64,000 nt of DNA from Octopus bimaculoides (Eukaryota), in assembly GCF_001194135.2 (NCBI RefSeq), contig NC_069000.1, forward strand, positions 1,000,667 to 1,064,666, read 5' to 3'. Numbering within the stretch: position 1 is the first letter of the stretch; every line of letters starts with the position of its first letter. The notes beneath the pieces are model-generated. The model saw only the letters and a list, made by a program, of their open reading frames with translations, ran no database searches and was not told the DNA's origin. The position numbers and the translations under genes are program-made. Shown here in pieces: positions 27,151 through 53,619 of the stretch.

Positions 27151-27397
27151 TATAAAACTGACATTTCCGATCATAAAATGGTATCATTTGAGCATAGGGG
27201 TCGTTGTGATTGACTTAGACTTTCCCTTAAAATTACCTGCTTTCAAGCCAAGTCCTTTTAGGTATTATCGGACTCAATATATTTCAAGATCCTTGTTTTT
27301 TTTTCATTTTTTTAAGGGTCTTTTTAATAGACTTTTCTCTTATCATTTCTCACTTTTTCTTTTGCTTAACTCAAATACTTTTTCTTTTGCAGCCAAC

Positions 27398-27506
27398 ATG
27401 CTGGAACACAGACCTGCCAAGATTGCTGTGATCGTTGTCACTCTAATAATATTCATTGTGACAGCTGTCCTAAATGCTTATGCCAGCCAACCTGATAGCA
27501 GTTCGG
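27398..27506 (+). CDS. First coding exon (36 codons + 1 nt; MLEHRPAKIAVIVVTLIIFIVTAVLNAYASQPDSSS-G) encoding TM1 of a TspO/MBR-like multi-pass membrane protein; apparently shared by three downstream terminal exons
   Basis: Acceptor tttttcttttgcAG at 27391-27392, Kozak-like gccaacATG at 27398, one hydrophobic helix, strong phase-1 donor G|gtaagac at 27507. Joins in frame to all three downstream GT-ATY-TAC (G-I-Y) exons. Confidence 0.88.
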
Positions 27507-27799
27507 GTAAGACAAACACTTTGACTCTTCAACCCTGTGCCTCTCACTGCATACATTATATCTCATGCATACATTATATCTTTACAGTCCATATATGCAT
27601 ATATTAAATTACAGCTATAACAGAAATATATTAAATCATATACACCTTCATCATCATCATCATTCCTCATGATCACATGGGTCAGACGAGAGTATGTTGG
27701 GGCAAAGATTTCTGTGGCTGGATGCTTGCAAGGCATTTATTTACAGCCAGTGATTATGCATACAGAAAAGGAGAAATACAAACTCACTCACACAAAGAA

Positions 27800-27985
27800 A
27801 CATGGATTCACACACACACACACAATAGGCTTCTTTCAGTTTCTGTCAACCAAATCCACTCACAGTGCTTTGGTCAGTCTGGAAATATAGTAGAAGATAC
27901 CTGTCTAAGGTGCCACGCAGTGGGCTTGAACCTCAGACCATTTGGTTGGGAATTGAAGTCCTTAACCACACAACCATGCCTGCTG
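27800..27985 (-). mobile_element. Family-2 SINE, antisense, 300 nt downstream of the shared donor
   Basis: ggcttctttcagtttctgtc...gtagaagatacctgtctaaggtgccacgcagtgggcttgaacc...ccacacaacc. Confidence 0.8.
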
Positions 27986-28751
27986 TACCTACATTCATAT
28001 ATCTGCCAATGTGTCCAGCCCATCCTGTCATGGGTTGGACATGTTGACACAGAATCCCGTGAATCCAAGGTCTCCATTTGGCCCCCACTGACTGCTTCTG
28101 CATGGTTTCTATGTGTGCATACTTTTTCTAATACCAACCATTTTCATGTATACCAGCTGCTCATTTTGGGTCACCAACACTTCACATATATGTATATATA
28201 CATGTACATACAAGACACACACACACCAATGTGCACATACATGCATGTGTGTATGCTTATCAATGCAGTCTATATTATAACTCGTAAACTTATTTGCATG
28301 TCTGTATGTTGGCATGTTTTTGTCTAAATCTATTTCACAGCACAATGGAGTGTTTGTTGTTGTTGCTGTTGTTGTTGTATAGCATTGGCTCTGTTCTGAT
28401 CAAGGAAGGACATTTTTATGTGGTTGTCTGGCTTGTAAGAAATTGCAGTCAAATCTTCCTCGAATACTACCCTACCGCTTTCAAAGTCAGTCAGATATAC
28501 AGGATGAACTAATTTATGCCATTTAGAATGGAGATGAGAAGTCTGTACCAAATCTCCCTTTTATCTGAAGTTTTCAACTAAGCTAAACAAAAACAGGTTT
28601 GACTTGTTAAAAATCCCATGAATTTACCTGTGAAAAGAGAGACAACTAAAATATATTTTGACTCATTTTCTTCTGTCTGTCTGTGTCGCCCCTACATTCT
28701 CCTTCTGTGTGTGTGTGTGTGTGCATTTGTTTGTGTGTGTGTGCATGTGTT

Positions 28752-28784
<33 letters not shown>

Positions 28785-29500
28785 TTGCTTCTTTCTTTTA
28801 TAATGTGACCAAACTACTTTAAAAATTAATTATGACTAAGGCGGCACCGTTTGGTCATTAATATAATGTAGAATGTGCCTCGACTGTGTGTGTTTTGTTT
28901 GTTTGTATCAATCAACCAGTCATCACCATCTTTGTTTCAATGTTCACTTTTCCATACTTACATGAGTCAGACAGAATTTGTTGAGGCAGATTTTGTACAG
29001 GTGGATGGCCTTGCTGTCACCAACCCTCACCTGTTTCCAAGTAAAGTAATATTTTTCTATGACCAGACATGTTTTCACAGAATACCACAAATGAAGGATC
29101 CGCGTTTACAATTATACAGCAAATGTCCAGGACTCAGTAAGACACACACACATGCGCACGTGTATGTGCATGGCTGCATGGTTACACATACCATGTGTTT
29201 AGCCATGTCCTTTTATATCAAACCAAGATTTGGGACATTTGCTGAACAGAGATCCCTGAAATATGAAATAGTAGTGGGAGTGATATAAATGATTTTTTAA
29301 AAACACTTGGAGGGTAATGCTGCAGCATGGCCACAGTTGAGTTCCTGAAAGGATTCTAAAGAAGGTGTTTGAAAGTTGAGGCAAGAATGACTCAAACGAC
29401 CTTTGGCCATTTGATATGGCTCGCTCTTCTGCTATGGTGTCAGTATAACATCTGCCAGAGAAAAGCATCAAGGCAATTAATAAGGATAATGATAATTATT

Positions 29501-29710
29501 ATTTCTATTCTAGGCACAAGGCCTTGGGGGAAGGAGGCTAGTGGATTATATCGACACCAGTGCGTAACTGGTACTTATTTCATCGACCCCCGTAAGGATG
29601 AAAGGTAAAATCGACCTCGGCGCAATTTGAACTCAGAACATAAAGACAGACGAAATGCTGCTAAGGATTTTGTCCGGCGCAGTAACAATTCTATAGGCTC
29701 GCTGCCTTAA
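29501..29710 (-). mobile_element. tRNA-derived SINE, family 1 (antisense, near full length)
   Basis: Reverse complement reads taaggcagcgagcc...ctgagttcaaattgcgccgaggtcgattttacctttcatccttacggggtcgatgaaataagtaccag, next to an (AAT)n tract. Confidence 0.85.
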
Positions 29711-29741
<31 letters not shown>

Positions 29742-30052
29742 TGCTAGCGGAAAGTTTTGGTTTAATGATCTTTTAGTTTCCAGATAAAACAAACGTCCAT
29801 TCAGGTATGTAATGGGACACAACAAAGGGACATGCATGACAGAATGACGTTTGCGTGAAACACAAAACACATGGTCGATCGTCTTTCTGAATCCTTGCCT
29901 TTCATCTCGTCAATCTGAAACAAGGGGAGTAATTACAGGTCTAAACAAGTGATTAAGGGAGACGACTGTGATAGTCTTCGTCTTTGCCGGTGATGTGATT
30001 ATCAATGTGTTAGACATTAGATTTTTTTCAGACAGTTAAGATTTACAAAGCC

Positions 30053-30189
30053 TTTTTAGAGAGTAGAATGGCATTAACCTTTTGGAAGGAATTTCACAAA
30101 TTGTGTGTAGGCTTTGCACACTTATTAAAGCCTACACACAATTTGTGAAATTCCTTCCTAAAGGTTAGTGCCATTCTACTCACTAAAAA
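30053..30189. repeat. Long near-perfect inverted repeat: 63-bp arms, 11-nt loop
   Basis: Arms 30053-30115 and 30127-30189 differ at 3 positions; loop gcacacttatt. Confidence 0.95.
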
Positions 30190-30444
30190 CTTTTTTCTTA
30201 ATCTTAACTTTTTGAAAAAAATCTTTCTCTAAATATATCATCATCATCGTCGTCGTCGTTTAACGTCCGCTTTCCATGCCGGCATGGGTTGGACGGTTTG
30301 ACTGAGGACTGGCAAGCCAGAAGGCTGCACCAGGCTCCAATCTGATCTGGCAACGTTTCTACAGCCCTTCCTGGTTTTGGTTTATTAATTAGAATCCTTT
30401 CAGTGGTTGCATTATTTTGATGATATCCTTCGATCCAGATCCGT

Positions 30445-30630
30445 CAGCTATGCCAGGCAAAATAAAATGTTTTGTGCCATTTCGTTTGTCTTCCCATTCT
30501 GAGTTCAAATTCTACCAAGCTTGACTTTACCTTTCAGGGTCAATAAGTACCAGTTGCACACTGGGGTTGATGTAATCAACTTCTCCCCTCCCCAAACTTG
30601 CTGGCCTTGTGCCAAAATTTGAAACCAATA
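30445..30630 (+). mobile_element. tRNA-derived SINE, family 1
   Basis: ctgagttcaaattctaccaagcttgactttacctttc...aataagtaccagttgcacactgggg...ggccttgtgccaaaatttgaaacc. Confidence 0.75.
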
Positions 30631-32606
30631 TCATCACTTCCAGGTTTTGTTGTGTTTGTGTTTTGTATTAGGTGGTTGGGGAGGTGTTTTTTTTATTTCG
30701 TTTTGTTTTAATAACTCCATAATGTGGTTAGTATAAAAAAAAGAGGTAAGTTCTTACTTGACAAGCTGAGACTACAATACGGTTTCAATTCCCAGCCAAG
30801 GACAGTTCAGTCCACTATGTTTATATTGTCCATGGAAAAGAAAAAAATTTCAACATTTCTCTCACACAGCCCTCTTTTTTCAAAACTTAATAACAGACAT
30901 CTGTCTGTCTCTGATATTAAAAGAAGTCAGGATTCTAACAATGGCAGCAATAAACAAAAAACAATAAAAAAAAACAATGTATTTTTGACTGTTGCTGTTG
31001 TTAAAGTAACGTTTGATTCCTGTTGGCATTGGTTTAAGATATCTTCTTCCTCTCATGATGTAAATGGTCTTTGTGTTATTTTTCCTTTGGCCCTTTCTAG
31101 ATTATAGGATAGGAAAGTTTAGGATGTTAAGGGTTAATACTGCTTCAGTTGCAGATACCAGATAATTTACCATGTTAAGCTACCCTTTCTGTACCCAAAT
31201 ATGTCCACTAACATTCTCCAAGCCATATTGACTGGATCCATCCATACATTGGATCTAAAGAGACTTGTATTTCTTCATTAAAATCTTTCAAGTCCAGCTT
31301 TCTAACCCTTTTGATGCCCTTTGAAAACCCCTGTTTAACTTTTGAACTCCTTCCTATTCCATGTAAATAAATGAAAATGCTTTATCTAGCTTCCTAACCC
31401 CTTTTCTGTGGCTTGACTAACTAAACCTGCTCACTTTCCATTCTTCCATTCAGCTGCTCACATCACAATCATCTGAACACCCAAATCTGGCTGGTTCGGT
31501 CAGTGCAGAGGCTGTAGGTCCAATGGGTTTCTAATGTGAGAAACTCTGAACTAATATTATTAATTTATAAAGAATGAACTAAGAGACAACTTTTGAGTTT
31601 CCTCTTGAAGGAAATGATACTGCTGTTATGTGGATGAAGATCCAAACATTCCAAAGTAAAAACAAACAAGAGAGAAAATCCCACCTGCAACAAAGATACC
31701 ACCAGGTGGCAGTAGTATGACTGGACAAGTGTTCTATCATAGCCTTGGGTTGACCAGTGCCTTGTGAGTAGAATTTGGTGACAGAAATTGTGAAAAGCCT
31801 TTCACATATGCATGTGTTCTATCTTCTGCCAATTTATAAAAACAAAACGTGTAAATGTTGGCAAGAAAATCAATGAACTTGTGCTTTTGAACAAAAATAC
31901 CTTGTGATATTTGTTGAGTTTCACAGTTACTCCCTTGTCACTCTTACCATTGGAAATGGAGTAAACCAATGGCCTCTTGCAAACCTCTGACCAACGATGC
32001 TATTGGCCAACAAATGGGCTATAAAATATAGACTTCAAAATAGTAGATTGCCATAGTAAATCCCATCCCAAAGTAGACCTTGCACGATTAATTTCTCCCT
32101 AATCTTAAAACAGATGAGCTGCAGAAATGCTAGGTCTTACGGTTGAGGTTAATTCATATAAAGAGCTAATAACTTACTTGAAAGAAGCAGAACAAAACCC
32201 TTCTCTCCAAGAACCAGTTCTTGATGTTGTTCCACCTTAGGTTGCATCTGGTGGAGCAGACATATAATTGAAGGTTTTCCACTCATGATCATTCTGCCTT
32301 TCCAGATATAGTTTATTTTGGACTACATTAATCCAATATAACCCTCACATATTGTTTTTTTTTTAATAATAGTTTGACTTAGAATAAAGAAATAATAGAT
32401 ATATTTCAAGAAATGTTCCCTTTTACAGCATTTAAAAATTCTCAAAAGCTTTCAGAATGTATCATAAAAAATTCTGTAAAATACAGAATAAAATACGTTT
32501 TCGCTTTTCCGTTTCAGCTCTGAAATCCTTGTCCACCTCTGACCTGTCTAACCCCTATTTAATTTTGCTTCTTCTTTAACCTACTAACCACCTCTTCCCT
32601 TTCCAG

Positions 32607-33400
32607 GTATCTACACTACATCCATTCGCAATGTTTCTAATGTCTACGCTACAGGATTCTCGCCTGCAAACTGGACTTTCAATCTTTGGTATGCCGTTTA
32701 CATGTGGACGGCTGCTTGGCTTCTCTTCTGTGTATCTACAATCTGTACTGTGAGCGGCAATAGTTACCTCTACCTCGAACCCGATGTGTTTCCCTCTAAG
32801 TTCTATCTGATCTTTGCCGTTACCCTCTGCCTCAACATCAGCTGGTTCATCCTTTATGACCGATCCTTCTTCATTGCTAGCTTCTTTGTCGCACTTACCA
32901 TGACTGTCTTCTCTTTCACCACCCTCGGCATATCGATCTACTATCTCTATCTATATGCGAACACACTCATTAAAAACAGCTTTGGCACTCAGGCCTGTCT
33001 CATCCAGCTGCTCGTCCATAATGGTATTGCCTTCTTTGGCACCTGGGTCACCTTGTTGATGCACATGAATCTGGACATAGCCCTACACTACAGATGGGAG
33101 GTGAGCCGTTACATCAGCGACCTGGTTCCGCTTTGCATCCTGGTTGTTCTCATAGTCACCTGGTTCACCTTGGACATAGCCATCTTCGACACCTTCACCC
33201 GATATCTGCTCAGCCCTTACGTCATGTTGGTGATTGTCTTCTCTGGGGTCGTTCATAAACAAGTCGATGTAAACAGCATCGACAGAATTGGGATTGTTGT
33301 TCTGGTGATGCTAATTCTTAGTTCTGTGACTTTAGTGACCAAATTCCTCTTCATGATCTGGAGGCATTTCAATGGCCCACAGACTAGTCTCTCTGTGTAA
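32607..33400 (+). CDS. Variable terminal exon A (about 7 TM helices); with exon 27398-27506 gives a 300-aa TspO/MBR-like membrane protein
   Basis: Branch point TACTAAC at 32582-32588, polypyrimidine tract and ccAG at 32605-32606. Open frame GIYTTSIRNVSNVYATGFSPANWTFNLW...NISWFILYDR...HNGIAFFGTW...KFLFMIWRH to TAA at 33398-33400. 109+794 nt = 301 codons. Clear homology to exons B and C. Confidence 0.9.
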
Positions 33401-33553
33401 AATCTCATGACTACTGAAACATGGAAAATAAGATTTGTTTTTCTCAATTTTAATTTTAAAATAACTGAAAAAGGACAATCATTCAATTATTAAGGTTTCA
33501 ACAAAATTTGTGAAATTCTATCTATATTTTTACTGAATTCCATTAATTTTTCC

Positions 33554-33600
<47 letters not shown>

Positions 33601-33604
<4 letters not shown>

Positions 33605-33801
33605 GGTGGTGAGCTGGCAGAATCATTAGCACGCTGGACGAAATGCTTAGCGGTATTTTGCCCATTGCTATATTCTGAGTTCAAATTCCAGCAAGGTCGA
33701 CTTGGCCTTTCATCCTTTTGGAGTCGATAAAATAAGTACCAATTGAGTACTGGGGGCGATGTAAATGACTTACCCCACCTTCCCCAAGCAAAAATTTGAA
33801 A

Positions 33802-33839
<38 letters not shown>

Positions 33840-34060
33840 GCTGGCAGAATTGTTAGCATATCAGACCAAAAATGCTTAACAACATTTCTTCCAGCTCTTT
33901 ACATTCCAAATTCAAATTCCACCAAAGTCGACTTTGCCTTTTTTTTTTGCCTTTTGGGGTCAATAAAATCTGTACCAGTTTTCTACTGGGATTGAATGTA
34001 ATTGATTTACCCCATCTCCCCTAATATTGCTGTACTTCTACCAAGATTTGAAACAATTAT
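33601..34060 (+). mobile_element. Two tandem family-1 SINEs separated by (ATT)n tracts, immediately 3' of exon A
   Basis: A-box-like gagctggcagaa and B-box-like gagttcaaattcc at 33611-33690; second copy 33838-34060. Confidence 0.85.
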
Positions 34061-34117
34061 TGTTATTATTATTATGATTATTATTATTATTAATGCTGTT
34101 TTATTTTTTTTTTAGTA

Positions 34118-34134
34118 AATAAATATAAAATAAA
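34118..34134 (+). terminator. Candidate poly(A) signals for isoform A (two AATAAA)
   Basis: AATAAA at 34118-34123 and 34129-34134, about 720 nt after the exon A stop and followed by GT/T-rich sequence. Motif only; common by chance in AT-rich DNA. Confidence 0.3.
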
Positions 34135-36123
34135 CCTCCCAAATCTTGAACTTGTGTATTTTTGTGACAAATTAGTTTGTTATTATTGAAGTGGCTGCTT
34201 TTAATATTGTTGCAGTTGTTTTGGTTGTCTGCTATAAATTAAGGTTTTTTTTTGCTATGCAGACAATAAGATTCTGTGTGTGTGTGTGTGTGTGTGTGTA
34301 CACATAATGTTACTGGTTACTGATATTGGTTACATGTTATTGTTGTTGTTGTGCATGTTGGACTGCTGTTTTCTTATCTGCTTCTGTAGTATTGATATTG
34401 TTTTATGCATGTTTGTTCAGTAGTTGTGTCATATACATGCATGTATGCATGCACACATATTCATGTGTGGACTTTCTTTTTCTAATTTACTCTGCAAACT
34501 ACACTTTGGATTGTTCAACAGTTTGATTTGTGAAGTTAGGGCAGCCTTGATGAAAGGCATTTAACATTGAGGAGCTGTGTTACCTCTTGATAGTAGAGGT
34601 AGCTTTGAGGAATATGTCAGCTGAAATATAGGAACATTTTGAGGAGCAAAAATGGCTAGTAAATTTATATCAAAAAAGGAGAAAATGCTTTGAGAATTTT
34701 ATGAATAAAAAGAAAATATTTTTACAATTTCATCTAAATATGCTACCGGTTTCAATTCTTTTAAACCAATTTAGTCATGCTGTAAGAAGAAATTACTATT
34801 TCATATATTTGGGAAGTCCACTTGTTTTTCTTACAAAATTCTCATGGTATTGGTTGTTGTTTCCTTCTGATGGCTGCTGGATTGTGAGATATATATATAA
34901 AGCTATAAAGTGACTCAAATTCTGAGAGTGTCATGCATGGCATTTATGATCAGTGTAATGTATGAAACCCTCAGCCCAGTCAGTTAACCCCAGGCCAATC
35001 TAAGCTACGTAATTTGCTAGATGGAAAGTGAAAGGAAGCCATTGAATGTGGGTGTGTCTACTTGTCTTGATATCATGCGATAACTGTAAATGAGCATCAC
35101 CATCATACACGTCAGGTTGTTCGTTTGAATTCTTCCATGGAAACTTGTTCAGCGATGGAGAAATATTACCATGCTTGGAAACAGGTGAGAGTTGGCAACA
35201 GGAAGGACATTTTGCCACAGAAAATCTGCTTCAACAAATTCCTTTCACCCACCCGATGCACACTTAGAAAAGTGGACATTAAAATCATAAGATCCAGGTA
35301 TCTAGGTGTAGGAAGTTAGTAAGCTTCGAGCAGTCCGTAGAAGGTATAAAAAAAAACAACTTTCAGAAATAATAATAGTTTATTGAGATTGAAGGTTGTA
35401 GGTTTTTCTCATATCAAAGTTCAATAAGCTAAAAAAAGTTTCTTTATTGTTCACAGTTAGCAAGTAGGATTGCCATGAATGCAAATAAAAATCCAAAATT
35501 GAGGGAATGAAGCAGGTAAAATCCTGACTACATAGGTTTCCTTGCTAGCAGATCCTCAAAAGTAATAATTAATCAATAAGAGGTGCTCTACTAATTACTT
35601 TTAAATTATATCTCTGGCGAGTTAACTTGGGATTCTTTAATGACAATGTATGTAACCTCCGTTTAACTAAGGTATCTTCAGCCTGATGAGTAGTTAGTGG
35701 AGGAACCCCTCATTGAGTAATCATTACTTCCAAGGGTCTGCTAGCTGGGAAAACATATGTGGCCTAAGCACCCACTACACTCTTGGAGTGGTTGGCTTTA
35801 GGAAGGGCATCCAGTTGTAGAAATTATCAGATGAGAGAGTTCGAGAAGTTAATGTTGTTAGTTGAAGATAAGGAGGACAGACTAAAACTGATCTGGGGGT
35901 GAGATGGTTAGGTCAGCGTTAGGACCAAATAACTCAGAATCATACAGAAGGCAGGAAATAGTTTAGGAAGCAAGGAGAGAATGCAGTTGGATAAGGTATG
36001 AGGCAATTGAGACGTCGTCCCACAATGTCAAACTAATAATAGGTAAGAATGATTGCGGCTGAATGTTTTCCTATGGAAACCATTCCACTGCAAAGACAGC
36101 AACAAATATTGAACTAATGGTGA

Positions 36124-36404
36124 TGCTAATGGGGGTTAATAATGGTAATTAATAATTAATAATGGGGGTTAATAATGGTAATTAATAATGGTAATTAATA
36201 ATGGTAATTAATAATGGTAATTAATAATGGTAATTAATAATGGTAATTAATAATGGTAATTAATAATGGTAATTAATAATGGNNNNNNNNNNAATAATGG
36301 TAATTAATAATGGTAATTAATAATGGTAATTAATAATTAATAATGGTAATTAATAATGGTAATTAATAATGGTAATTAATAATGGTAATTAATAATGGTA
36401 ATTA
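36124..36404. repeat. 13-bp minisatellite (GGTAATTAATAAT)n with a 10-N gap
   Basis: Many near-identical tandem units visible directly. Confidence 0.95.
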
Positions 36405-36409
36405 AAGTA

Positions 36410-36605
36410 ATGTGGCAAGCTGGCAGGATTGGTGGCGTGCCAAAATGCTTGGAGGCATTTCATCTAAGTTCAAATTCTGCTAAGGTCAACTTTGACTTTC
36501 ATCCATTTTGGGGTCAATAAAATAAGACCCAGTTGAGCATTAGGGCTCAATATAACTGACTTACCACCCTCCCCCGAAATTACTGGCCTTGTGCCAAAAA
36601 TGGAA
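36410..36605 (+). mobile_element. tRNA-derived SINE, family 1
   Basis: caagctggcagg...agttcaaattctgctaaggtcaactttgactttcatcc...aataagacccag...ggccttgtgccaaaa. Confidence 0.8.
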
Positions 36606-36764
36606 ACCAAAATGGAAATTAAAGTAAGTAGAGGACAGAATGAGAGGACAGAGGTCAGCTGCTTGGCTGTTGATGATTTGGTTTCGCAGACTGGACACTC
36701 GACCGGTTCTTGTGACACTTACACACACACACACACATGCATGTACAGAAATATGTACATAGGT

Positions 36765-37095
36765 GCAAGCATGGTTCAATCCTACTGCATGGTACCTTGG
36801 GCAAGTGTCTTCTACCATAGCCTTGGGCCAACCTAAGCGTTGTGAGTGAATTTGATAAACGGAAACTGAAAGAAGCCCATCATATATGTGTGCAGGTGTG
36901 AGTGTGTCCCATCACAGCTTGACAACCAGTGTTGATGTGTTTATGTCCCCATAGCTTAGCAGTTCAGCAAAAGAGACTGATAGAATAAGCACCAGGCTTT
37001 AAAAAAAAAGAAAAGAAGTAGTGAGGTTGATTCATTTGACCAAGGCATTGCCCCAGCATGGCCACAACCTAATGACTGAAACAAGTAAAAGATGA
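36765..37095 (+). mobile_element. Family-2 SINE, sense
   Basis: catggttcaatcctactgcatggtaccttgggcaagtgtcttctacc...ggaaactgaaagaagccc...tgccccagcatggccac...ctgaaacaagtaaaaga. Confidence 0.8.
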
Positions 37096-37746: not shown

Positions 37747-37782
<36 letters not shown>

Positions 37783-38049
37783 TCATCATCGTTGTCATCG
37801 TTTAACGTCCTCTTTCCATGCTGGTATGGGTTGGACAGTTTGACTGAGGACTGGTGAACTAGCAGGCAGTACTGGCATCGACCATGTTTGAATGGTGCTT
37901 TTTACATGCCACTGGCATGGGAGCCAGTGAGGTGGCAAAAACAAAGACAGGTGTATAAACAATAAGCAGGTGTATTAGTTTGATGCTCGGGAAGGTGAGA
38001 AAATCTTTTGTTTAGAGCCTATGCTCTTCAACAGAAAGGAACACAAGGA

Positions 38050-38686: not shown

Positions 38687-38721
<35 letters not shown>

Positions 38722-39354: not shown

Positions 39355-40139
39355 GTATCTACACGTCCACCATGTCAAATGTATCTAATGAGTTTATGAC
39401 TGGAGTCACTCCAGCTCGATGGACCTTTGGTATCTGGGGAGTAATCTACTTCTGGATGGCTGCCTGGATCATCTACTGCCATGCTGCTATCTTCATTAAA
39501 TGGGACGGTGATTACTTGTATAAAAACGATGTATTTGCACCTGGCATCTTTTTTGTCCTTTATAGCATCAACCTGATTCTCAACTTCACTTGGCTCATTC
39601 TCTTCGACAGAAAGCTCATTGTTGCTTCTTTCTTTGTTCTCCTTGCATTGGCAATCACTGCCGTTGCATGCTTATGCATAGCCATGTACGCGTTTAAGAA
39701 GGGAATGCAAAACATTGCCCAATCTGAATTCAAGCTCCACTTCTGGCTCATCCAGATCCTAATGTTCAACGGCATTGCCTGTTACGCTACATGGCTGACC
39801 ATAGCCACTAACCTAAACCTCAACATTGCTCTGACATATGCATGGAATTTTAATGGAGACACAGTGATTCTTATCGTCCTGCTTTTTATTGGTGCAACAA
39901 TTATTTCAGCAGACATGATTATCTTTGAGAAACATACTCTTTACATTATCACACCTTATTTGGTTCTGGTGGTTGCCCTCTATGGCGTTGTTGATGAACA
40001 TGTTGATATAGAGGACTTGTCTCGTATTGGTATATTCATGATAGTTGTACTGGCCCTCTTCTGTGGTGGTCTTCTCTATAAAATTGTTGCAACTATTTGG
40101 AGACACTTCCGATGTCAACGGCCTGCAGCACTAATCTAG
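39355..40139 (+). CDS. Variable terminal exon B; with exon 27398-27506 gives a 297-aa paralogous membrane protein
   Basis: Acceptor tctttctAG at 39353-39354, then GT ATC TAC ACG TCC ACC ATG in frame with ORF 39372-40139. Motifs TPARWTFGIWGVIYFW, NFTWLILFDRK, NGIACYATW, KIVATIWRH; stop TAG at 40137-40139. Confidence 0.9.
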
Positions 40140-43225: not shown

Positions 43226-43263
<38 letters not shown>

Positions 43264-43861: not shown

Positions 43862-43898
<37 letters not shown>

Positions 43899-44489
43899 TG
43901 GCTCATTGGATCCTGTTAAACTGTCCAACCCATGCCAGCATAGAAAATGGGTATTAATTGATGACACACACACACAACCACAGAACAGACTGCATATTTG
44001 ATTATCTTTATTCTTAGGGGTTTTTTTCTTGAAAATAATATTGAATATGTTATTATTCTCAAAAGAAAGAAAAATTTACTTTCTACGACAGCTTTTGATA
44101 GAGACTTTGTGCTAATACAATAAAACGTCTCTGATCTTTTATTCCAGACAAACAACCATCAACTTAGGTCTATACAGTTTAACATCTCTGTCATCTCAAG
44201 CATTGCTGTCAGGTATAAAGGGAGGGAAAGACACCACAAGGCATTTTGCTCAATCTTCTAACATGGAAGACAGATAGAGTTGCCATGTAAATGACATGAA
44301 ATATTTGCAGCACAGTTGCAAAGTGTTGTAAAAACTAAATTTAAATTGATTGTTTTTCTTTCTCATAAACGTAGTCAATTATGTCTCCCATGCTGTGAGA
44401 TGTCTGTGTGTGTATGTGCACACACATATATATACATACATATTTTTACATACATACCATCTAAAAACAGGCGTTAAAGGATGATGATG

Positions 44490-44531
<42 letters not shown>

Positions 44532-44763
44532 GTGTGTGTATGTATAAATATATACACACACACACATTATCCAGTTTACCTTCTCCATTTTCTTTTCCCA
44601 TTTCTTTCTCTTCTTGTCTATCCTTCCTTCTTTTCAGAAGAAGAGTGAATACTCGAAACATAAAAGACATGCTCTTCTTTTTTTGCCAGTTCTTTATTGT
44701 CAACCTAATACACTCTTTTTTTTTGCCCCCTTTTTTTTTTTAACTCTATTGTATTTTTTGCAC

Positions 44764-44828
<65 letters not shown>

Positions 44829-44989
44829 GCTTTTTGTAAAACTACAAATCTATATTTGTATTTCTACTTTGGTTTGGCAATAAATATTCTGATGCACAGA
44901 CGATGATATTGTAGTTGTGTTTTCACTTTGATACCCCTGTGGCAAATAAAAGAAAATTATATTAATTACTTTTACTCATTCATTCCATT

Positions 44990-45129
44990 TTTACATTCTG
45001 AATTCAAATGCTACCAAGGTTGACTTTGCCTTTCATCCTTTCAGGGTCAATAAAATAAGTACCAGTTATGCACTGGGGGTTGATGCAGTCAACTAACCAC
45101 TCCCCCTAAACTTGCTGGCCTTTGAAACA

Positions 45130-45171
<42 letters not shown>

Positions 45172-45420
45172 ATTATTATTATTATTATTATTAATATTAT
45201 TATTATTATTAATATTATTATTATTATTATTATTATCAACATGGTGAGGTAGCAGAATCGTTAGCACACCAGGCCAAATGCTTAGCAGTATTTTGTCCAT
45301 TTTTACATTCTAAGGTCAAATTTCGTCAAAGTTGACTTTGCCTTTCATCCTTTTGATGTCAACGGAATCAACTTACCTCCTCTCTCAAAATTTCAGGCCT
45401 TGTGCCTATAGTAGAAAAGA
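44990..45420 (+). mobile_element. Two family-1 SINEs flanking an (ATT)n tract
   Basis: ctgaattcaaatgctaccaaggttgactttgcctttcatcc at 44998-45040; ggtgaggtagcagaatcgttagc...gttgactttgcctttcatcc at 45243-45350. Confidence 0.8.
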
Positions 45421-45779
45421 TTATTATTATTGCTATTATTCGTGATCTGAGTAATACATGAAGAGAGTTTTTCTTGAACCAGGGACTTAGGTATATCTTG
45501 GAGCACAAATGTGCAGAGAAGAGTTCAAGGTTAACAAAGGAGTTCATGAGTAAAGAAATGTCTAAGGTTAACACAGCATGTCCAACATTAACAAATATTC
45601 TGTGTTCTAATGCCCTAACAATGTTTACAGATCTTCGTACTGCTATTTTCAGGAACACGCCTATGTCCACCTTAGAGGGAATTTATCAATGCCCTTACAG
45701 AAATAGTTATGTATCACTCCCATTTAACTAATTACCTATATGCTCATTAGACACAAATTAACAGCTAGGTTGGTGTCAT

Positions 45780-46460
45780 TGAGTTTCTTTCAACTTCCGT
45801 CACATTATAATCACTTTTATATTTCCCTTTGTCAAAAATTGATAGACTTACAGCCTATGGTGAGGAGTTTTGGAACCATGTGCAATGTTATTGAGAGGTG
45901 CCAGAATCTTTGAGCAGGAAGGACATCTTCTAAGGATGATTCTATGTGTGGATGGCTTTCTACATTAACAAATGATGATGACATTGTGAAAGTGTTTGTG
46001 GGGAACCATGAAAATCATGACTTATTATCCATGAAGTTTCCCAAGAAGCAGGCATTTGTACAAGTCCATGGCACATAAGTTTAAAAGAAATATTGCAGAT
46101 GCCTTATGTCACTGCTAAGTCTGTGCTGTGTCCGATGACAAACGAAAAAGAGAACTGAGTCACATTTGAGTGCTGAGGAAAATTTTCTGTTGAATTTCTT
46201 AAATAAGTAATTAAACATGGCTGCATGGAAGTGTGGCAATAATGACGGAATGGTGAGGCAGCCATTATAGCAAACTGGATCATCATCACTGTAATCAAAG
46301 AAGAATAAAGCATACCAAAGTCGCTCAAGTGTGAAGGTGATGTTGGTCTTTTAATTAATAGAAAGTCATTGTTCATCATGTGTTTGCTCCATGGAATCAG
46401 GGAATCAATAAAGCAAGGTGCAAGGAATTTCTTTATTCCACAGGTTTTTGACAGCAAAGA
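45780..46460 (+). mobile_element. Highly degenerate mariner (DD34D-type) transposase remnant
   Basis: Collinear fragments across frames: TAYGEEFWNHVQCY, LIIHEVSQEAGI, EILQMPYVTAKSVLCPMTNEKEN, KVMLVF, VIVHHVFAPWNQGINK. These match the order of mariner motifs AYGEE..S..QCYEW, LTIREVAEEVGI, LGMRRVAAKFVP, KVMLTVF, GIVHHEFVP.GQTVN. Confidence 0.7.
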
Positions 46461-46499
46461 ATGACATGGAGTGCCAGCACTAGCATCACCTCACTCAAG

Positions 46500-46538
46500 A
46501 GGTCAGGGTCAGGGTCAAGGTCAGGGTTAGGGTCAGGG
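46500..46538. repeat. (GGTCAG)n hexamer run
   Basis: ggtcagggtcagggtcaaggtcagggttagggtcaggg. Confidence 0.85.
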
Positions 46539-46723
46539 CACAACATAGACACACACACACACTTCTGTACATATTGGAGGCAGACTGGGGATTCACTAGT
46601 CTGAACATTCTGTTGCTTTAAAGTACCTTTTTATCATTAATAGGGTTATGATAATGAGCAGAGATGTTGAATTCCATGTGAGCCTGTTGTCTTCACAATT
46701 TCTTCAAGGATATACACATGCCC

Positions 46724-46790
<67 letters not shown>

Positions 46791-47032
46791 GTAAATCCAA
46801 AAAAGAACAAACACAAAAAAAAACAACAGCATGAGGACATGGTACATGTAAAGTATTAGCAGACGCTCAGGGAAGGAAAAAAAGATGGTTTAACATTTCA
46901 AGCAAACGCTCTTCTTCGGAAACAGAGGAAAGTCCAATAAAAAGGAAAACAGAGGAAGAAAATCAACAACGATTCACATGTGGTTACATATGCTTTTATA
47001 GGTGTATATATTGTATGTATATATATACATAT

Positions 47033-47926
47033 ACTAGCTGACGTACTCGGTAATTCCCAGGAAAGCAGAGCTTATCCCTTGGTTCAGTTCTCATAATTGT
47101 TTCACTAATCCAGTAACAACAATACAAAGCATGTAGCCCTTAAACAGTTTTTGTGCATTTACAGAGAATACCGAACTGTCTTATACAGGATCTTGTTTTT
47201 AGGGATTCGCAATAAGTTATGAAAACCCAAATTGTGAAGTCAGTTATGTAATAACATGAAATTAGTTACCTGATAGTAAGAATTCAAATAAAGTAGCCCT
47301 GAAAAGTGCTTTGATGCATTCCCAGAGTATATAGAACATAGGAGGAAATACTAAGGTATGCTAAAATTGTGAAGCATGTTACGTAATAACAGGATAATCA
47401 GATATGAGTTAATAATTCAAAGTAAATAACCCAGAAAAGGACTTTTGTGCGTTCCCAGAGAATATTATCCTCAGGGGCGCTAGTGTTGGTATATTCGTGA
47501 ATAAGTCACTAACTGAAATAAGGGATCTATTGTTTAGAAAAATACTATTTATTTGTTTAAGGATTGTACTGAATAAATTGTGAAAATAGTATTAGTCCAA
47601 ATACTAAGAAATGAGCATACTCATTTACCAAATAATTTAGGAAAATTGAGTTATTTCCATTGGCTATATATAAGGATCCCTACTAGGGGCGAATGGGTTA
47701 TTTCTCTTGGCTTTAAAAATAAACATATTAGATATATATATAAGGATCCCTTCCAGGGGCCCTATTATCGATGTTTTTAAACAATCTGAGTATGCCACGT
47801 AGTTTCCAGACATGAATTCTAGTCATGTGTCAAGTTTCATCAAAATCGATAAAACGATGTAGGAGGAGTTAGCTAACAACTCCACAAACACCCCCACAGA
47901 CAGAATTTCCCACATATGGAGTAGAT
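47033..47926 (+). mobile_element. Non-autonomous Helitron/Helentron-like (HINE/DINE-type) element with internal ~130-bp direct repeats
   Basis: Begins ACTAGCTGACGTACTCGG after a TA microsatellite. Ends with aagtttcatcaaaatcg...ggaggagtt...acagacaga...AGTAGAT, typical of this class. Internal repeats at 47221-47332 and 47357-47465. Confidence 0.6.
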
Positions 47927-48532
47927 ATATACAGATACACACAAATTTCACTCAAAGGTATTGATCAATGTACAGCTGTAGTAGAAGACACCAGCAACAC
48001 TCTGAAACGTAAAGTATAATTCCCAAATTAACTTCTTAACCACCAAGATATGCCTATACCTTTATTTCACATACAGGTGTGTGTGTGTGTGGAGAGAGTG
48101 GCTGATATGAGGAAGGGCATCCAACCATAGAAATAAAAAAACATAATGAAACCTAATTAAGATGTCGTCCTCAACCCAACTAGGAGGGCAGTAATTCTGA
48201 ATAGAAATGAGATGGACATAACAACCTAGCCAACCCATTTGACGATAATATACAGATATTGTGGATGTGTACATACAATATATATAAACATATATGCATG
48301 TGTGTGTGTGTGTGTGTGATTTATTTATTCATTTAAGAGTTCGCACTACGCTTATTTAGGAACCAGGTTGTCTTAAGTAACTGAGGAGGGCAGAGGGTCG
48401 AAATGATTGTAGTGTAAACCATTTGGATAAAAAAAAAGAAAAGGAACTAGTGTACACTTGCTTTTTTGTATTGAGTACTACATATGAACGTAATCAACTT
48501 CAATTGAACCAATTTCAGTGAAGTAAGACATG

Positions 48533-48579
<47 letters not shown>

Positions 48580-51502
48580 CTATTTGATAATATCGTATAC
48601 TTTCTGTTGTCAGATAACTCTAACATACATCATCACTGAGTGTATATATATAACTACAACTTATAAATAAGTCCTGGCTGTGTAGAATAATAGGAGCTGC
48701 TGCTGCTGTCATTAAAGTGGTTATTGTTAAACACAGCGACATAAGTTACATAACAGCTTGTGAATAATACTCGTTATGTAAACGTTTAACTTTGATCTTA
48801 CATAACAAACTGTTTCACTCGAATGTTCTGTAACCATTTAAAGGGGTGGAGAGTCAGACAAAACCACCCTGTGGTATTTACTTTCACCTATCTCTGTCCC
48901 AAAGTTCAAATCCTGCCGAAGTCAACTATGCCTTTTCAGCTCTATTTACTTAAGCCCTTCGTGCTCCCTATGGGGGCACACACAGAGAGGCCATCGACTT
49001 TTTCCAACCGCTCTCAATTCTGGGTCGTCTTTTCAATCCCTGTTTTTTCGCTCTACTTCTGTATTATCCTACCGCCAGTTATTTTTAGGATTTCCTCTCT
49101 TCATCACCCTTGCAGATTCTTGACCGGGGCCTGACGTGTAAATAATGGTTCCTTGATGGAAGCCCTTCCCATCTTTCACAAATCTTGTTAGTTTTCAGTT
49201 ATCCATTTACAGTGACTAGGGACCACTTTCGGAATAGCTGCCCCTATAAATTGCAATTTCTCCAGTTTGGCCAGGATTTTTCCAGATGAAATTTTTTTAA
49301 TACACATTTTAAAATTAAAACAAAACAAAAAAAATATTATTTGGCAATCCTTCGGTATTGGTCTATAGAGTATCAGTATGAGGAGACATTATTCACCGTC
49401 CTTTTCAGCCTCGCCTCTGTGATTCGGAAAAGGTTGAGGACGAATGACGTCTACCATTACCGAAGGATTACACATATTTTCGTTTGAAGCATCACATTTT
49501 TGCCTTTTCACAATATCTTTCATCATTTTATTGTTGCATTCCACATTCTCAAATATTTGCAATTCGAATTAAAATGAAATTTTTAAAATTCCTACCTCTT
49601 CCTACTCTGATCATACATTTCGTAATTAAAATGAATTTTTTTTTTCGTTAATTTTGTTTTCTTTTTCTTTTTTTTATACTTTTGCCATTCCCTCCACAAG
49701 TGACCCTCCACATCGATCTTATTTAGGTCAAACTAAAGCGTTTGACTCATAAACAATATAGAAAGACCTTGGTGGGTGCATACAGACATACAGTTTTCAT
49801 TTTGTTTCATTTTGTAGGTATTCGTGTAAGCGCCCACCAGTTTCTTTTTACATTAAATTACTTCTATAATCGTAATCTTCTCTACCAGGAAAGTAATTGT
49901 GAAAATCTCATTAAAAAACATTCATTTTTCAGAAAGTTACGAGGAAGGAAAATCGGTGGAGAAGGTCACTTGTGTTGGAAGGCCAAGCTTTTTCTCAATA
50001 CGGCATAAAAACTGAATTGAGAGAATTAAAAGAAGAATATAATAACACTTACCTTATTTAGTTGACATAATTCTCATCAAATTTCATTTCATAAATCGTT
50101 TTTTCATCTTTCACAAAAGACAACAGTTTTTATAGTCAAGAGATATTTTAGGGGTCTCATTATGCTTTTCTTCAATTAAAAAAATATTCTTTTCTACATT
50201 TAAAATGACTGAAATTTTTGATACTTCTTTCAAAATATTATTTTGTTTCGTTTTCTTTTTTTTGGCGATAAAAGTCCTTCTTTTGTAATTCAGGAAAGAT
50301 ACAATGGCGCGGGGGGAGGGGCGGTGTAAATATTTAACTTACTTTTTGTTTTGTTTTGTCTTTCTAAGTAATTCGAATTCCAAAAGTTTCAGAATGTAGA
50401 ATAAATATAATAAAATGGCGAGAAATAAATTAAAATGTATTTTTAAAAAAACAAACTATAATAATGATTGTTGTTCTGAAGGGTTACGATAAGGTGGTGG
50501 TGGTGGTTGGGGGGGGGGNNNNNNNNNNNNNNNNNNNNTATGGATTAATTTTTTTCTTTCTTTTAAGTTGTTTCCCTCCTATTGTTTTGAAATATGTATT
50601 AAAAAGATATTTGGATAACTTCCAACTAAACAGAAAGATTCTATCGTATGTAGGACAGCTATTCCAAAAGTCAACCCAAGTCAGAGACTGGGGTCGATAT
50701 TAACTATAATCCTTCACCGAGTTTGGGAAAGTTTTTTGGTTGATATTTGAATAGGATTGATAATGAAACCCAAACAATATGGGGAAAATATAAGAAATAC
50801 ACTTGCGTAATCGGAGTAATACTTAAAAGTCACTGATTAAATGCCATTATTACTAATTTTCTAAAATCTATTGTACAAACATCGTAACAAAAAGAATACA
50901 CTTCTTATAAATATATTTGAAAGTAATTGCAAATTGGAAACTTATTTAAACACACATGCAGACGTATTTACTACATATGTAGACAGATGGTGAGAGAGAG
51001 AGAGACATATATGCACACACTTTTTGTCTGACAAACAAGAGAAAGAGTTCTACATAGGCGTTTGTGAGTATAGTGTTTGACATATGGTGATTTACTCCAA
51101 TGCTTTTCAAATTTTCTTGGTGGGATCTTTTAGAAGACAACAATAACGATAGTCCATTTTTGTTATTTATAATTATAAGCAGACTTTTGTGATGAGAACA
51201 ACCATTGTCCAAATTACTAATTCTGGTTAAAAACAACAACAAACGATAATGGGAACAACTGTGAAATTTTAATAATGTAAATTAATTGAATATAAAATAC
51301 AGTCGGAGAATAAGTCTGACATCTAACAGGCTAAGTTTCAATGTTATTGGACCTCATCAGCTAAGCATGGTCTAACTATTACTGCGGAACTCAAACGATT
51401 AGAGCAGTAAATCATATGTTTGTGAATGAACCCATCCTTCACCCACTTTACTATCAAGTTTTCATGCAGCAGAAACCCTACATATTCCCCCCAGTCATTT
51501 CA

Positions 51503-51561
<59 letters not shown>

Positions 51562-51571
51562 TATATATATA

Positions 51572-51790
51572 ATCATCATCATCATCCGTTTTCCATACTG
51601 GCATGGGTTGGACGGTTTGATTGGGGTCTGGGAAGTCAGGAGGCTGCACCAGGCTCCAGTCTAATCTGGCAGAGTTTCTACAGCTGGATGCCCTTCCTAA
51701 CACCAACCACTCCAAGAGTGTAGTGGGTGCTTTTTACGTGCCACCGGCATGGGAGCCAGTCAGGCGGCACTGGTAACGACCCATGCATGA
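51572..51790 (-). mobile_element. Antisense copy of the (GAT)n-tailed LINE/SINE 3' family
   Basis: atcatcatcatcatccgttttccatactggcatgggttggacgg...ggatgcccttcctaacaccaaccactcc. Confidence 0.75.
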
Positions 51791-51840
51791 ATGGTGCTTA
51801 TTGCATACCACTAGCCAATGCCGCCTGGCACATAAAAAGT

Positions 51841-51872
51841 ACCATTCAACAATAAAGTATATATGCTATTTA

Positions 51873-51922
<50 letters not shown>

Positions 51923-51954
51923 TAAATAGCATATATACTTCATTGTTGAATGGT
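51841..51954. repeat. Palindrome: ~38-bp unique arms (1 mismatch) around a central (AT)n
   Basis: accattcaacaataaagtatatatgctatttatctctc-(AT)n-gagagataaatagcatatatacttcattgttgaatggt. Confidence 0.9.
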
Positions 51955-52507
51955 TGCTGCTATCAGAAATGGGTTTGTAATTATAAAGTATTGTATTCTA
52001 AATGCTTAAATGTGTCTATAAGAATGCCTGATGTTGTTTTAGCCCTAGGTCAGCCTAGATTGAGTAGACCTAATATCAAAGGCATGCTGGCCTCACCATC
52101 CTCATCTATTTGTAATTCTTGGATTTCCTTTTCCAATGTGTCCTTCTTGTTTTAAGGCTACAGAATGTGATTTGTGGAAATTTCATTGTTATTACAAACC
52201 AATCAAATAACAACATAAAATCTCCCCCGTTGGCAATGGTATAACAGACGTTCCAGGAATCTTGTTGCATTGTCTGTTAGCCACACAAATTAGGTGCCTA
52301 GGAAGGTTCCAACAGGTGTTTCTACTACAGAAATAGTTGCAGCATCCCACACTCCATACAAGAATGGTAAAAGGTAATGGTGTAATTATGTTTTGATTAG
52401 ATTTTCTTTGGCATTTTTCTTATTGTTGTTTTCTATTTTCTCTATTGATGTCTTTTCCCTTCCTTCCTTTCTCCATACTTACCTGCTTCATTTTGATATA
52501 ATTTCAG

Positions 52508-53298
52508 GTATTTACACGACTGAAACAGGAAATGTGTCAGATTTTTACCCAACCCGACTTACACCAGCTAGCTGGACCTTTGGCATTTGGGGTTTTATCT
52601 ATTTCTGGATGATTCTCTGGCTCGTATACAGTACAGTAGCCATCTTTTTGAAAGTCGGCAACGAATATCTTTACACCAGTGTCATCTTCATGCCATGCCT
52701 TTTCTTCTTCATCTATTCTGTCAACTTGCTCCTCAATATCTCTTGGCTCATTCTTTTTGACCGGAAGCTGTTCATAGTCAGCCTTTTCGTGCTGCTGTTC
52801 ATGTTTATCAGTGCGGTCACCTGTGTCTGCATTTCATGCTACGTTCTCACCAACAACTTTGACCTCATCAACGAAACAAAGCTGTCTGTTCATGTCTGGC
52901 TGATTCGTTTTTTCGTGCAGAATGGCATCGCATTTTATGCGGCATGGCTGTTAGTTGCCACTCACTTGAACTTAGACATTGCACTGCGTTACTCCTGGGA
53001 AATCGACAGCGATACCTGTGACCTCACTGCAGTCATTATGCTTCTTGTCATCATCTGCACCTGGTTCCTTCTTGATGTCATTGCCCTTGACAACTACACT
53101 CGTTACCTGTTCAGCGAGTACATTGTGTTCATTGTTGCCTTCTGTGGTGTGGTCTACAAGCAGTTGAATACAGATGTCTACGACCGGATAGACATCTTGA
53201 TTCTGATCTGTTTGTCTGCCAGTGGCGCTTTCTTTGTTTTCAAGATGGCCATTCTCCTCTGGAGACACTTCAGGAAGTCTTCTTATATAACATATTAA
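52508..53298 (+). CDS. Variable terminal exon C; with exon 27398-27506 gives a 299-aa paralogous membrane protein
   Basis: Pyrimidine-rich run and tttcAG at 52506-52507, then GT ATT TAC ACG. Motifs TPASWTFGIWGFIYFW, NISWLILFDRK, QNGIAFYAAW, KMAILLWRH; stop TAA at 53296-53298. Confidence 0.9.
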
Positions 53299-53386
53299 CT
53301 TCAACCACACAGGTTTCCATTACTTTCAGCTCTGACATTCCAGTGTAAAAGTTTGAAAAAAAAATACATGAGTTAAAAATGTAAAT

Positions 53387-53392
53387 ATTAAA
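53387..53392 (+). terminator. Candidate poly(A) signal for isoform C (ATTAAA)
   Basis: ATTAAA about 90 nt after the exon C stop. Motif only. Confidence 0.25.
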
Positions 53393-53619
53393 CATGAGGT
53401 AATAATATAAATTTTAAATATAAAAAATATGAAAATACATAACATGAAAATCTAAAAATCTAATGCGAAGAGCAGTTTAAAAAAAAAAAAATTTAAATTC
53501 AACTAAATTTTTAAAGAAAATTATAGCCTTTTCTATAAAACAATTCACATCAAAGCTAAACCCAGGTCTGACTGAATATACATTTTGTAATACTCGATAT
53601 ATATATCTATGCCTATCTT

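What the first reader, a model, noticed from the sequence alone, without database searches (positions are those of the whole stretch)
27393..53400. One constant N-terminal exon spliced to three duplicated, mutually exclusive terminal exons: an inverted protocadherin/UGT1A-type diversification cassette
Seen: a single TM1 exon ends in a phase-1 donor (27506|gtaag). Three paralogous ~790-nt exons lie 5.1, 11.8 and 25.0 kb downstream. Each starts at a phase-1 acceptor with the same G-I-Y-T, has an intact frame for about 7 TM helices and has its own stop. Reading 33.4-39.3 kb and 40.2-52.5 kb, I found only repeats and no second TM1-like exon. The only gaps there are 10, 337 and 20 N, so exon C at least has no room for a hidden private first exon. 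The exons are strongly diverged (roughly half identical by eye) yet uninterrupted, which implies long-term selection. Established: clustered protocadherins and UGT1A use variable first exons with constant tails. Inference: this locus does the reverse, duplicating about 88% of the CDS as alternative last exons under one promoter and N-terminus to give three membrane proteins (300, 297, 299 aa) chosen by splicing/polyadenylation. Caveat: exon B has an in-frame ATG in good context (ccaccATG, 39372) and the 337-N gap precedes it.
Basis: partly seen in the sequence, partly recalled or inferred. Interest (0 to 1): 0.92.

Follow-up and report, generated by a model that had tools for sequence, protein, structure and literature searches.

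The report
Octopus gene with three alternative last exons
One octopus gene joins a short shared exon (first membrane helix) to one of three duplicated end exons, making three related membrane proteins; this is real and old among cephalopods, but it is already in RefSeq and is a known type of gene layout.

Summary
The window is Octopus bimaculoides LOC106877552. A 114-nt exon (27393-27506, ATG 27398, phase-1 donor) encodes TM1. Three paralogous terminal exons follow, A 32607-33400, B 39355-40139 and C 52508-53298. Each has an AG acceptor in phase 1 and its own stop, giving proteins of 300, 297 and 299 aa. These are exactly RefSeq isoforms X1, X3 and X2.

The N gaps lie in introns. The gap-free loci of O. 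sinensis and Argonauta hians show the same TM1-A-B-C order. A family profile of the TM1 exon finds only one TM1 exon per locus. All nine terminal exons are intact, with dN/dS of 0.12-0.18.

In a cuttlefish, assembled RNA contigs map onto the genome through one identical TM1 exon to two different terminal exons, which group with octopod A and C. Scallops instead have tandem two-exon genes with the intron at the same place.

- The TM1 exon is not the first exon, and at least two upstream 5' exons exist.
- The paralogs are about 40% identical, not about 50%.
- The layout is a known kind (3' tandem clusters such as Drosophila PGRP-LC, Pip and CG42235).

The proteins belong to an uncharacterised 8-helix family distantly related to TspO/MBR. 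Interest is modest.

The parts
27393..27506 (+). Shared internal exon. It carries 5 nt of 5' UTR and codons 1-36 plus the first base of codon 37 (TM1, with the family-invariant N26). The AG acceptor is at 27391-27392 and the phase-1 donor GT at 27507-27508.
   Evidence: It is the only TM1-profile hit in the window. dN/dS against O. sinensis is 0.11.
32607..33400 (+). Alternative terminal exon A, coding part, with stop TAA at 33398-33400. It gives the 300-aa isoform X1.
   Evidence: Orthologs are intact in O. sinensis (94% aa), Argonauta (78%) and cuttlefish. dN/dS is 0.155. The A clade has 100% bootstrap.
39355..40139 (+). Alternative terminal exon B, coding part, with stop TAG at 40137-40139. 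It gives the 297-aa isoform X3. The internal in-frame ATG is at 39372.
   Evidence: dN/dS is 0.177. The Argonauta ortholog is only 51% identical and lacks the internal Met. No B-type exon was found in the cuttlefish locus.
52508..53298 (+). Alternative terminal exon C, coding part, with stop TAA at 53296-53298. It gives the 299-aa isoform X2.
   Evidence: dN/dS is 0.120. It groups with the second cuttlefish terminal exon at 97% bootstrap.
2179..2292 (+). Candidate alternative 5' exon of the same gene. It is the ortholog of the first 38 codons of the long O. vulgaris model CAI9738013. Its use in O. bimaculoides was not shown.
   Evidence: tblastn gives 87% identity at E 1e-19. The O. sinensis copy is at L003 15519-15632.

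Best explanation
This is a single gene, O. bimaculoides LOC106877552. Transcription starts at one of at least two upstream 5' exons and runs through a shared 114-nt exon that encodes the start codon and TM1. The single phase-1 donor at 27506 is then joined to the phase-1 acceptor of one of three tandemly duplicated terminal exons, A, B or C. Each of these encodes the remaining seven helices, about 88% of the protein, and carries its own stop and 3' end.

The choice is made by competition among the three acceptors, coupled to cleavage and polyadenylation after the chosen exon. This is alternative-last-exon usage. Use of A ends the mRNA before B and C, while use of C requires skipping A and B. 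The result is three paralogous 8-helix membrane proteins of an uncharacterised, distantly TspO/MBR-like family, all with an identical TM1.

Shown here: the exon anatomy, the single TM1 exon, conservation in octopods, purifying selection, and shared-exon usage in cuttlefish RNA. Inferred: the octopus junctions (from gene models), the acceptor and poly(A) competition, and any functional difference between the three proteins.

Origin: the ancestral gene had two exons with this same intron, as scallop genes do. In the cephalopod lineage only exon 2 was duplicated, or duplicated genes lost their first exons. This happened before octopods and cuttlefish split, at least for A and C.
For: - Anatomy and intact frames.
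- The products equal RefSeq X1, X3 and X2. O. sinensis LOC115221323 has X1-X5, covering all three bodies with two N-terminal forms. The O. vulgaris models CAI9738013/14 join exon 1 to B.
- O. sinensis L003 and Argonauta L004 contain no N and show the TM1-A-B-C order with AG acceptors in the same phase.
- The TM1 profile finds one exon per octopod locus (E 1e-14 to 1e-16) and both scallop first exons (about 1e-11). Nothing else is found.
- dN/dS is 0.155, 0.177, 0.120 and 0.114 for A, B, C and exon 1.
- Cuttlefish RNA contigs L019-L023 and L018 are 100% identical over the TM1 exon. On the Acanthosepion pharaonis genome both sets map to TM1 at 48200-48316, then to terminal exons at 80199 and 95971-95975 respectively. 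Each contig contains only one body.
- Scallop genes have two exons with the intron at the same position and private first exons.
- N26 in TM1 is invariant in 56 homologs.
- The AlphaFold model (pLDDT 93) has TM1 plus seven helices.
- The cephalopod bodies form one clade. Cuttlefish body 1 groups with A (100%) and body 2 with C (97%).
Against: - I saw no octopus RNA reads or transcript contigs. The Logan contigs related to A and B (L001, L006-L009) are genomic. The octopus junctions therefore rest on RefSeq and O. vulgaris models, whose evidence I could not inspect.
- Poly(A) hexamers follow each exon, but they are common in this 36% GC DNA.
- B has an in-frame ATG in a good context, conserved in the three Octopus species, so a TM1-less product cannot be excluded.
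- No B-type exon was found in the cuttlefish locus.
- The species of the cuttlefish RNA runs is inferred from 99-100% identity to the A. pharaonis genome, not from metadata.
Confidence: 0.86

Rival explanations
1. A, B and C are three separate tandem genes. B and C each have a private first exon that is hidden in an assembly gap or is too diverged to recognise.
For: Scallops have exactly such tandem two-exon genes. A 337-N gap precedes B.
Against: - The gap-free O. sinensis and Argonauta loci have the same order and only one TM1 exon. In Argonauta the A-B and B-C intervals are only 4.6 and 5.8 kb.
- The O. sinensis sequence matching the gap is dispersed repeats.
- The profile recovers first exons that are only about 50% identical.
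- Cuttlefish RNAs share one TM1 exon.
Confidence: 0.03
2. Exon B is also, or instead, expressed on its own from the internal ATG at 39372. This gives a 255-aa protein without TM1, from a promoter in the A-B interval.
For: The ATG sits in a ccaccATG context. The Met is conserved in O. sinensis and O. vulgaris. A 255-aa model exists in UniRef and in Logan gene calls.
Against: - The Met is absent in Argonauta B and in both cuttlefish bodies.
- The 255-aa Logan calls come from genomic contigs.
- The acceptor is conserved in all species.
- TM1 carries an invariant Asn.
Confidence: 0.07
3. The choice of terminal exon is dictated by which upstream 5' exon (promoter) is used, not by free competition downstream of one promoter.
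For: In cuttlefish, all 11 A-type RNA contigs start in the 5' exon at L024 20.3-20.64 kb. The single C-type contig starts in a different one at 13147-13263. Octopus models also have two or more 5' forms.
Against: There is only one C-type contig. The O. sinensis RefSeq models combine the long N-terminal exon with all three bodies, and the short form with both A and C.
Confidence: 0.15
4. B and/or C are decaying relics, and the isoform models are prediction artefacts.
For: No octopus transcripts were seen here. B evolves fast, at 51% identity between Octopus and Argonauta.
Against: - All nine exons are intact in three species, although synonymous sites are saturated between Octopus and Argonauta.
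- dN/dS is 0.12-0.18.
- A C-type mRNA is expressed in cuttlefish.
Confidence: 0.02

Closest known systems
3' tandem clusters of duplicated alternative terminal exons or cassettes in Drosophila (PGRP-LC with LCx/LCy/LCa, Pip, CG42235; PMC6191721, which cites Hatje and Kollmar 2013)
   Same: A common 5' exon with one donor is spliced to one of several tandemly duplicated, homologous 3' units. Each unit has its own stop and 3' end. In PGRP-LC the constant part also holds the membrane anchor, and there are three variants.
   Different: - Here each unit is a single exon that encodes 88% of a polytopic membrane protein, not an ectodomain.
- I found no docking or selector type intron complementarity with an exact 9-11-mer scan.
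- The lineage is cephalopods, and the cassette is much older than CG42235's.
Drosophila lola and mod(mdg4); Anopheles gambiae GSTD1 (one shared 5' coding exon and four alternative 3' exons). These are recalled from my own knowledge and were not checked here.
   Same: A constant N-terminal part is joined to alternative C-terminal exons that are paralogs of each other.
   Different: These are soluble proteins. mod(mdg4) uses trans-splicing. My literature search did not retrieve the GSTD1 primary paper, so this comparison is only a lead.
Clustered protocadherins and UGT1A (variable first exons with a constant tail)
   Same: One locus yields a set of paralogous proteins that share one constant coding part.
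   Different: - The polarity is reversed.
- In those loci each variable exon has its own promoter, and promoter choice selects the isoform.
- Here the variable exons are terminal, have acceptors and no start codons, and must be chosen by splicing and 3' end formation.
TspO/MBR family (Pfam PF03073)
   Same: There is weak sequence similarity over helices 2-6. B scores 23.5 bits at E 5e-5, and 14 of 56 homologs match at E<=0.01, the best at 4e-8.
   Different: - The scores are below Pfam's cut-off for the octopus proteins.
- There are eight helices instead of five.
- A PDB sequence search gave no hit, and no TSPO chain appeared among the best 50 listed Foldseek matches.

Membership tests
Alternative-last-exon gene with a 3' tandem cluster of duplicated terminal exons | One shared upstream exon and donor serves all variants, with no private first coding exons. 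| tested here: met
   The TM1 profile finds one exon in the window, in O. sinensis and in Argonauta, the latter two gap-free. The O. sinensis sequence equivalent to the gap is repeats.
Alternative-last-exon gene with a 3' tandem cluster of duplicated terminal exons | Two or more homologous downstream exons have acceptors in the same phase, and each has its own stop codon. | tested here: met
   The exons are 37-43% identical.
Alternative-last-exon gene with a 3' tandem cluster of duplicated terminal exons | Mature transcripts join the shared exon to each variant and contain only one variant. | tested here: inconclusive
   This is met in cuttlefish for the A-type and C-type exons. In octopus it rests only on RefSeq and O. 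vulgaris gene models, and I saw no octopus reads.
Alternative-last-exon gene with a 3' tandem cluster of duplicated terminal exons | Each variant has its own cleavage and polyadenylation site. | tested here: inconclusive
   AATAAA or ATTAAA lies within 0.1-1.2 kb of each stop, but such hexamers are frequent in AT-rich DNA. The cuttlefish contigs end 0.24-0.6 kb after each stop.
Clustered protocadherin / UGT1A type (variable first exons) | Each variable exon carries its own promoter and start codon and is spliced to constant downstream exons. | tested here: not met
   The variable exons begin at acceptors, have no in-frame ATG upstream and end in stops. The constant exon lies upstream.
TspO/MBR (PF03073) | The score reaches Pfam's gathering threshold. 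| tested here: not met
   A and C give no hit. B scores 23.5 bits against a cut-off of 24. Of 56 homologs, 14 match at E<=0.01, so the relationship is distant rather than membership.
TspO/MBR (PF03073) | A five-helix TSPO fold. | tested here: inconclusive
   The AlphaFold model has eight helices. Foldseek against PDB gives nothing below E 0.1, and no TSPO chain is among the best 50 listed matches. A local sub-domain comparison was not done.

The most novel reading that the evidence does not exclude
The cassette is an ancient coleoid device, predating the octopus-cuttlefish split. It lets different cell types express different members of an uncharacterised TspO-like 8-helix family from one locus. 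The choice of terminal exon would be coupled to the choice of upstream promoter (the 5' exon at 13 kb with the distal body, the one at 20 kb with the proximal body in cuttlefish). That would be long-range coordination between initiation and termination, rather than simple acceptor competition.
Probability: 0.1. Interest if true: 0.55.

Novelty: new member of a known kind. Interest (0 to 1): 0.3.

Why it matters
The locus is a clean, deeply conserved example outside insects of protein diversification by duplicating a terminal exon that encodes nearly the whole protein. It also has a clear before-and-after comparison: scallops keep tandem whole genes, while cephalopods share the first coding exon.

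It could serve as a simple model for how splice-acceptor choice and polyadenylation are coordinated over 5-25 kb in cephalopods. It also points to an uncharacterised membrane-protein family, found in many marine invertebrates and teleosts, that has no solved structure.

It does not reveal a new principle, and the isoforms are already in RefSeq.

Tried and rejected
- Hidden first exons. tblastn with the 36-aa exon and a 32-sequence profile against six-frame translations of four loci found nothing. The only borderline hits, near window 38649 and L003 84714, are a microsatellite and noise.
- Octopus transcript evidence from Logan contigs. L001 and L006-L009 proved to be genomic contigs of another Octopus species, colinear with the introns.
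- Intron docking and selector pairing, as in PGRP-LC. No 9-11-mer in the first 1.5 kb after the donor is complementary to two or more of the regions upstream of the acceptors, in any of three species. This was an exact-match scan only, so weak or G-U pairings would be missed.
- Phylogenetic footprinting between O. bimaculoides and O. sinensis. The introns are 82-88% identical throughout, too close to single out exons.
- Poly(A) hexamers are uninformative in AT-rich DNA.
- A PDB sequence search with the family profile found nothing. Foldseek found nothing significant.
- Rfam found no family in the window.
- A literature search for the gene identifiers gave no paper.
- The species of runs SRR30931880-84 and SRR21372856 could not be confirmed from papers.
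Full report
**What is there.** The window is Octopus bimaculoides.

The shared exon spans 27393-27506. It is preceded by an AG acceptor, holds the ATG at 27398 and ends at a phase-1 donor, G|GTAAGA. It is therefore an internal exon, not the first exon of the gene.

Exons A (32607-33400), B (39355-40139) and C (52508-53298) each follow a pyrimidine tract and AG. Each starts with codons for G-I-Y-T when joined to the G of exon 1, and each runs open to its own stop. No in-frame ATG lies upstream of any acceptor. The first internal ATGs of A and C fall inside helix 2.

The three exons are 37-43% identical in amino acids, with synonymous sites saturated.

**Gaps.** All three N runs in the finding are intronic. 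The 20-N gap lies within one continuous alignment to O. sinensis. The 10-N gap sits in a short stretch that has no separate counterpart in O. sinensis. The 337-N gap corresponds to 3.2 kb in O. sinensis (L003 79766-82934). That stretch consists of repeats dispersed through the locus and has no TM1-like ORF.

**Is there a hidden first exon?** I built a profile from 32 N-termini of the family and searched six-frame translations of four loci: the window, the O. sinensis locus (111 kb, no N), the Argonauta hians locus (36.5 kb, no N) and a scallop locus.
- It found one exon in each octopod locus, at E 1e-14 to 1e-16.
- It found both private first exons of the two scallop genes, at E about 1e-11.
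- Nothing else rose above noise.
- The only borderline hits, upstream of B, are a microsatellite and a minus-strand fragment.

In Argonauta the A-B and B-C intervals are only 4.6 and 5.8 kb, which leaves little room for anything to hide.

**Conservation.** O. sinensis has TM1 at 60167-60272, A at 73049, B at 85873 and C at 100700. Argonauta has TM1 at 10001-10109, A at 13729, B at 19116 and C at 25742. All acceptors are AG in the same phase, and all nine terminal exons are intact.

dN/dS between O. bimaculoides and O. sinensis is 0.155 (A), 0.177 (B), 0.120 (C) and 0.114 (exon 1). Between Octopus and Argonauta, A and C keep 74-78% identity while B keeps only 51%.

**Transcript evidence.** I found no octopus transcript contigs. 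The Logan contigs related to A and B are genomic.

Cuttlefish RNA-seq assemblies, however, contain full-length mRNAs of this gene. Contigs L019-L023 encode P0243, which has an A-type body. Contig L018 encodes P0227, which has a second body.
- The two sets are 100% identical from 5 nt before the ATG to 121 nt after it. They then drop to about 70% identity, and their 5' UTRs differ.
- On the gap-free Acanthosepion pharaonis genome (L024) both map to the same TM1 exon at 48200-48316.
- One then continues at 80199-81239, and the other at 95971-97357.
- Their 5' exons lie at 20277-20640 and at 13147-13263 respectively.

Six Sepia esculenta contigs show the same A-type structure. The run identifiers are tied to that species by PMC10466719 and PMC9538352. 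This is direct evidence that one TM1 exon serves two terminal exons, with one body per mRNA.

In a neighbour-joining tree the cephalopod bodies form one clade (100% bootstrap). Cuttlefish body 1 groups with octopod A (100%) and body 2 with C (97%). B is seen only in octopods. The A/C duplication and the shared exon therefore predate the split between octopods and cuttlefish. From memory that split is roughly 250-300 million years old.

**Origin.** In the scallop Ylistrum balloti, tandem paralogs are complete two-exon genes. Their intron sits at the same position, just before the G-[IL]-Y motif, and each has its own first exon. The cephalopod arrangement is thus derived. Either exon 2 alone was duplicated, or duplicated genes lost their first exons.

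**The protein.** The family is large. A search of cluster representatives gave 1736 at E<=0.001. It occurs in molluscs, annelids, nemerteans, brachiopods, hemichordates, echinoderms, cnidarians, rotifers, some protists and teleosts (the si:dkey-29d8.3 gene name). All members are labelled uncharacterised.

An AlphaFold model of isoform C, built on 56 homologs, is confident (pLDDT 93, pTM 0.91). It has eight long helices, with TM1 at residues 6-30. Asn26 in TM1 is one of only five invariant residues in the family. This argues that bodies lacking exon 1 would be incomplete.

Similarity to TspO/MBR is weak. B scores 23.5 bits against a cut-off of 24, and 14 of 56 homologs match at E<=0.01. The PDB gives no sequence match and no structural match below E 0.1.

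**Mechanism.** The anatomy allows only one reading. The single donor at 27506 must pair with one of three acceptors, and each choice ends the reading frame within that exon. The most likely control is competition among the acceptors, coupled to cleavage and polyadenylation after the chosen exon. This step is inferred, not shown.

A PGRP-LC style docking and selector pairing was not detected by an exact k-mer scan.

In cuttlefish the 5' exon differs between the A-type contigs (11 of them) and the C-type contig (one). That hints that promoter and terminal exon may be coupled. The sample is too small to say. O. sinensis models also combine one 5' exon with all three bodies.

**Comparison and novelty.** Variable 3' regions made of tandemly duplicated terminal exons or cassettes spliced to a common exon are described for Drosophila PGRP-LC (three variants), Pip and CG42235 (PMC6191721). 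From memory, lola, mod(mdg4) and Anopheles GSTD1 are similar.

The protocadherin and UGT1A comparison holds only as a mirror image. The feature that defines those loci, a promoter for each variable exon, is not met here.

The isoforms are already in RefSeq for two octopus species, though no paper mentions the gene. I rate it a new member of a known kind, real and well conserved, of modest interest.

Noticed in passing
window 62619-63053 (-), similarity to about 63170: A 144-aa ORF encodes the C-terminal half of a fourth paralog of the same family. It lies tail-to-tail with exon C. It is closer to the scallop proteins and is split by an intron that A, B and C lack. The rest of the gene lies beyond the window end. 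The same neighbour is present in Argonauta (L004 about 35190-35606, minus strand).
   Followed up: partly
window 2179-2292 (+); upstream of window position 1: There is a candidate alternative 5' exon, 87% identical to the first 38 codons of the long O. vulgaris model. The O. sinensis exon that adds 32 N-terminal residues (MASSPRD...) maps about 1.2 kb upstream of the window start. The gene's promoters therefore lie at or beyond the window's left edge.
   Followed up: partly
L024 13147-13263 and 20277-20640 (cuttlefish genome): All 11 A-type RNA contigs use the 5' exon at 20.3-20.64 kb, and the only C-type contig uses the one at 13.1 kb. Promoter and terminal-exon choice may be coupled, but the sample is too small to tell.
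   Followed up: partly
window 39355-40139 compared with L004 19116-19921: Exon B evolves much faster than A and C. It is 51% identical between Octopus and Argonauta, against 74-78% for the others. No counterpart was found in the cuttlefish locus.
   Followed up: partly
isoform C protein (window 27398-27506 plus 52508-53298): The confident 8-helix AlphaFold model (pLDDT 93) has no Foldseek match in the PDB below E 0.1. The family is widespread in marine invertebrates and teleosts and has no described function.
   Followed up: partly
window 55044-56409 and 58528-59888: Two blocks are 92-93% identical to O. sinensis, against a background of about 82-88%. They contain no long ORFs and give no Rfam match. 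They may be untranslated regions of the neighbouring gene or conserved non-coding elements.
   Followed up: no
L024 96430-96434: The cuttlefish genome assembly has a frameshift in the second terminal exon relative to the RNA contig. This explains the truncated 255-aa model CAE1283133 and is probably an assembly error.
   Followed up: no
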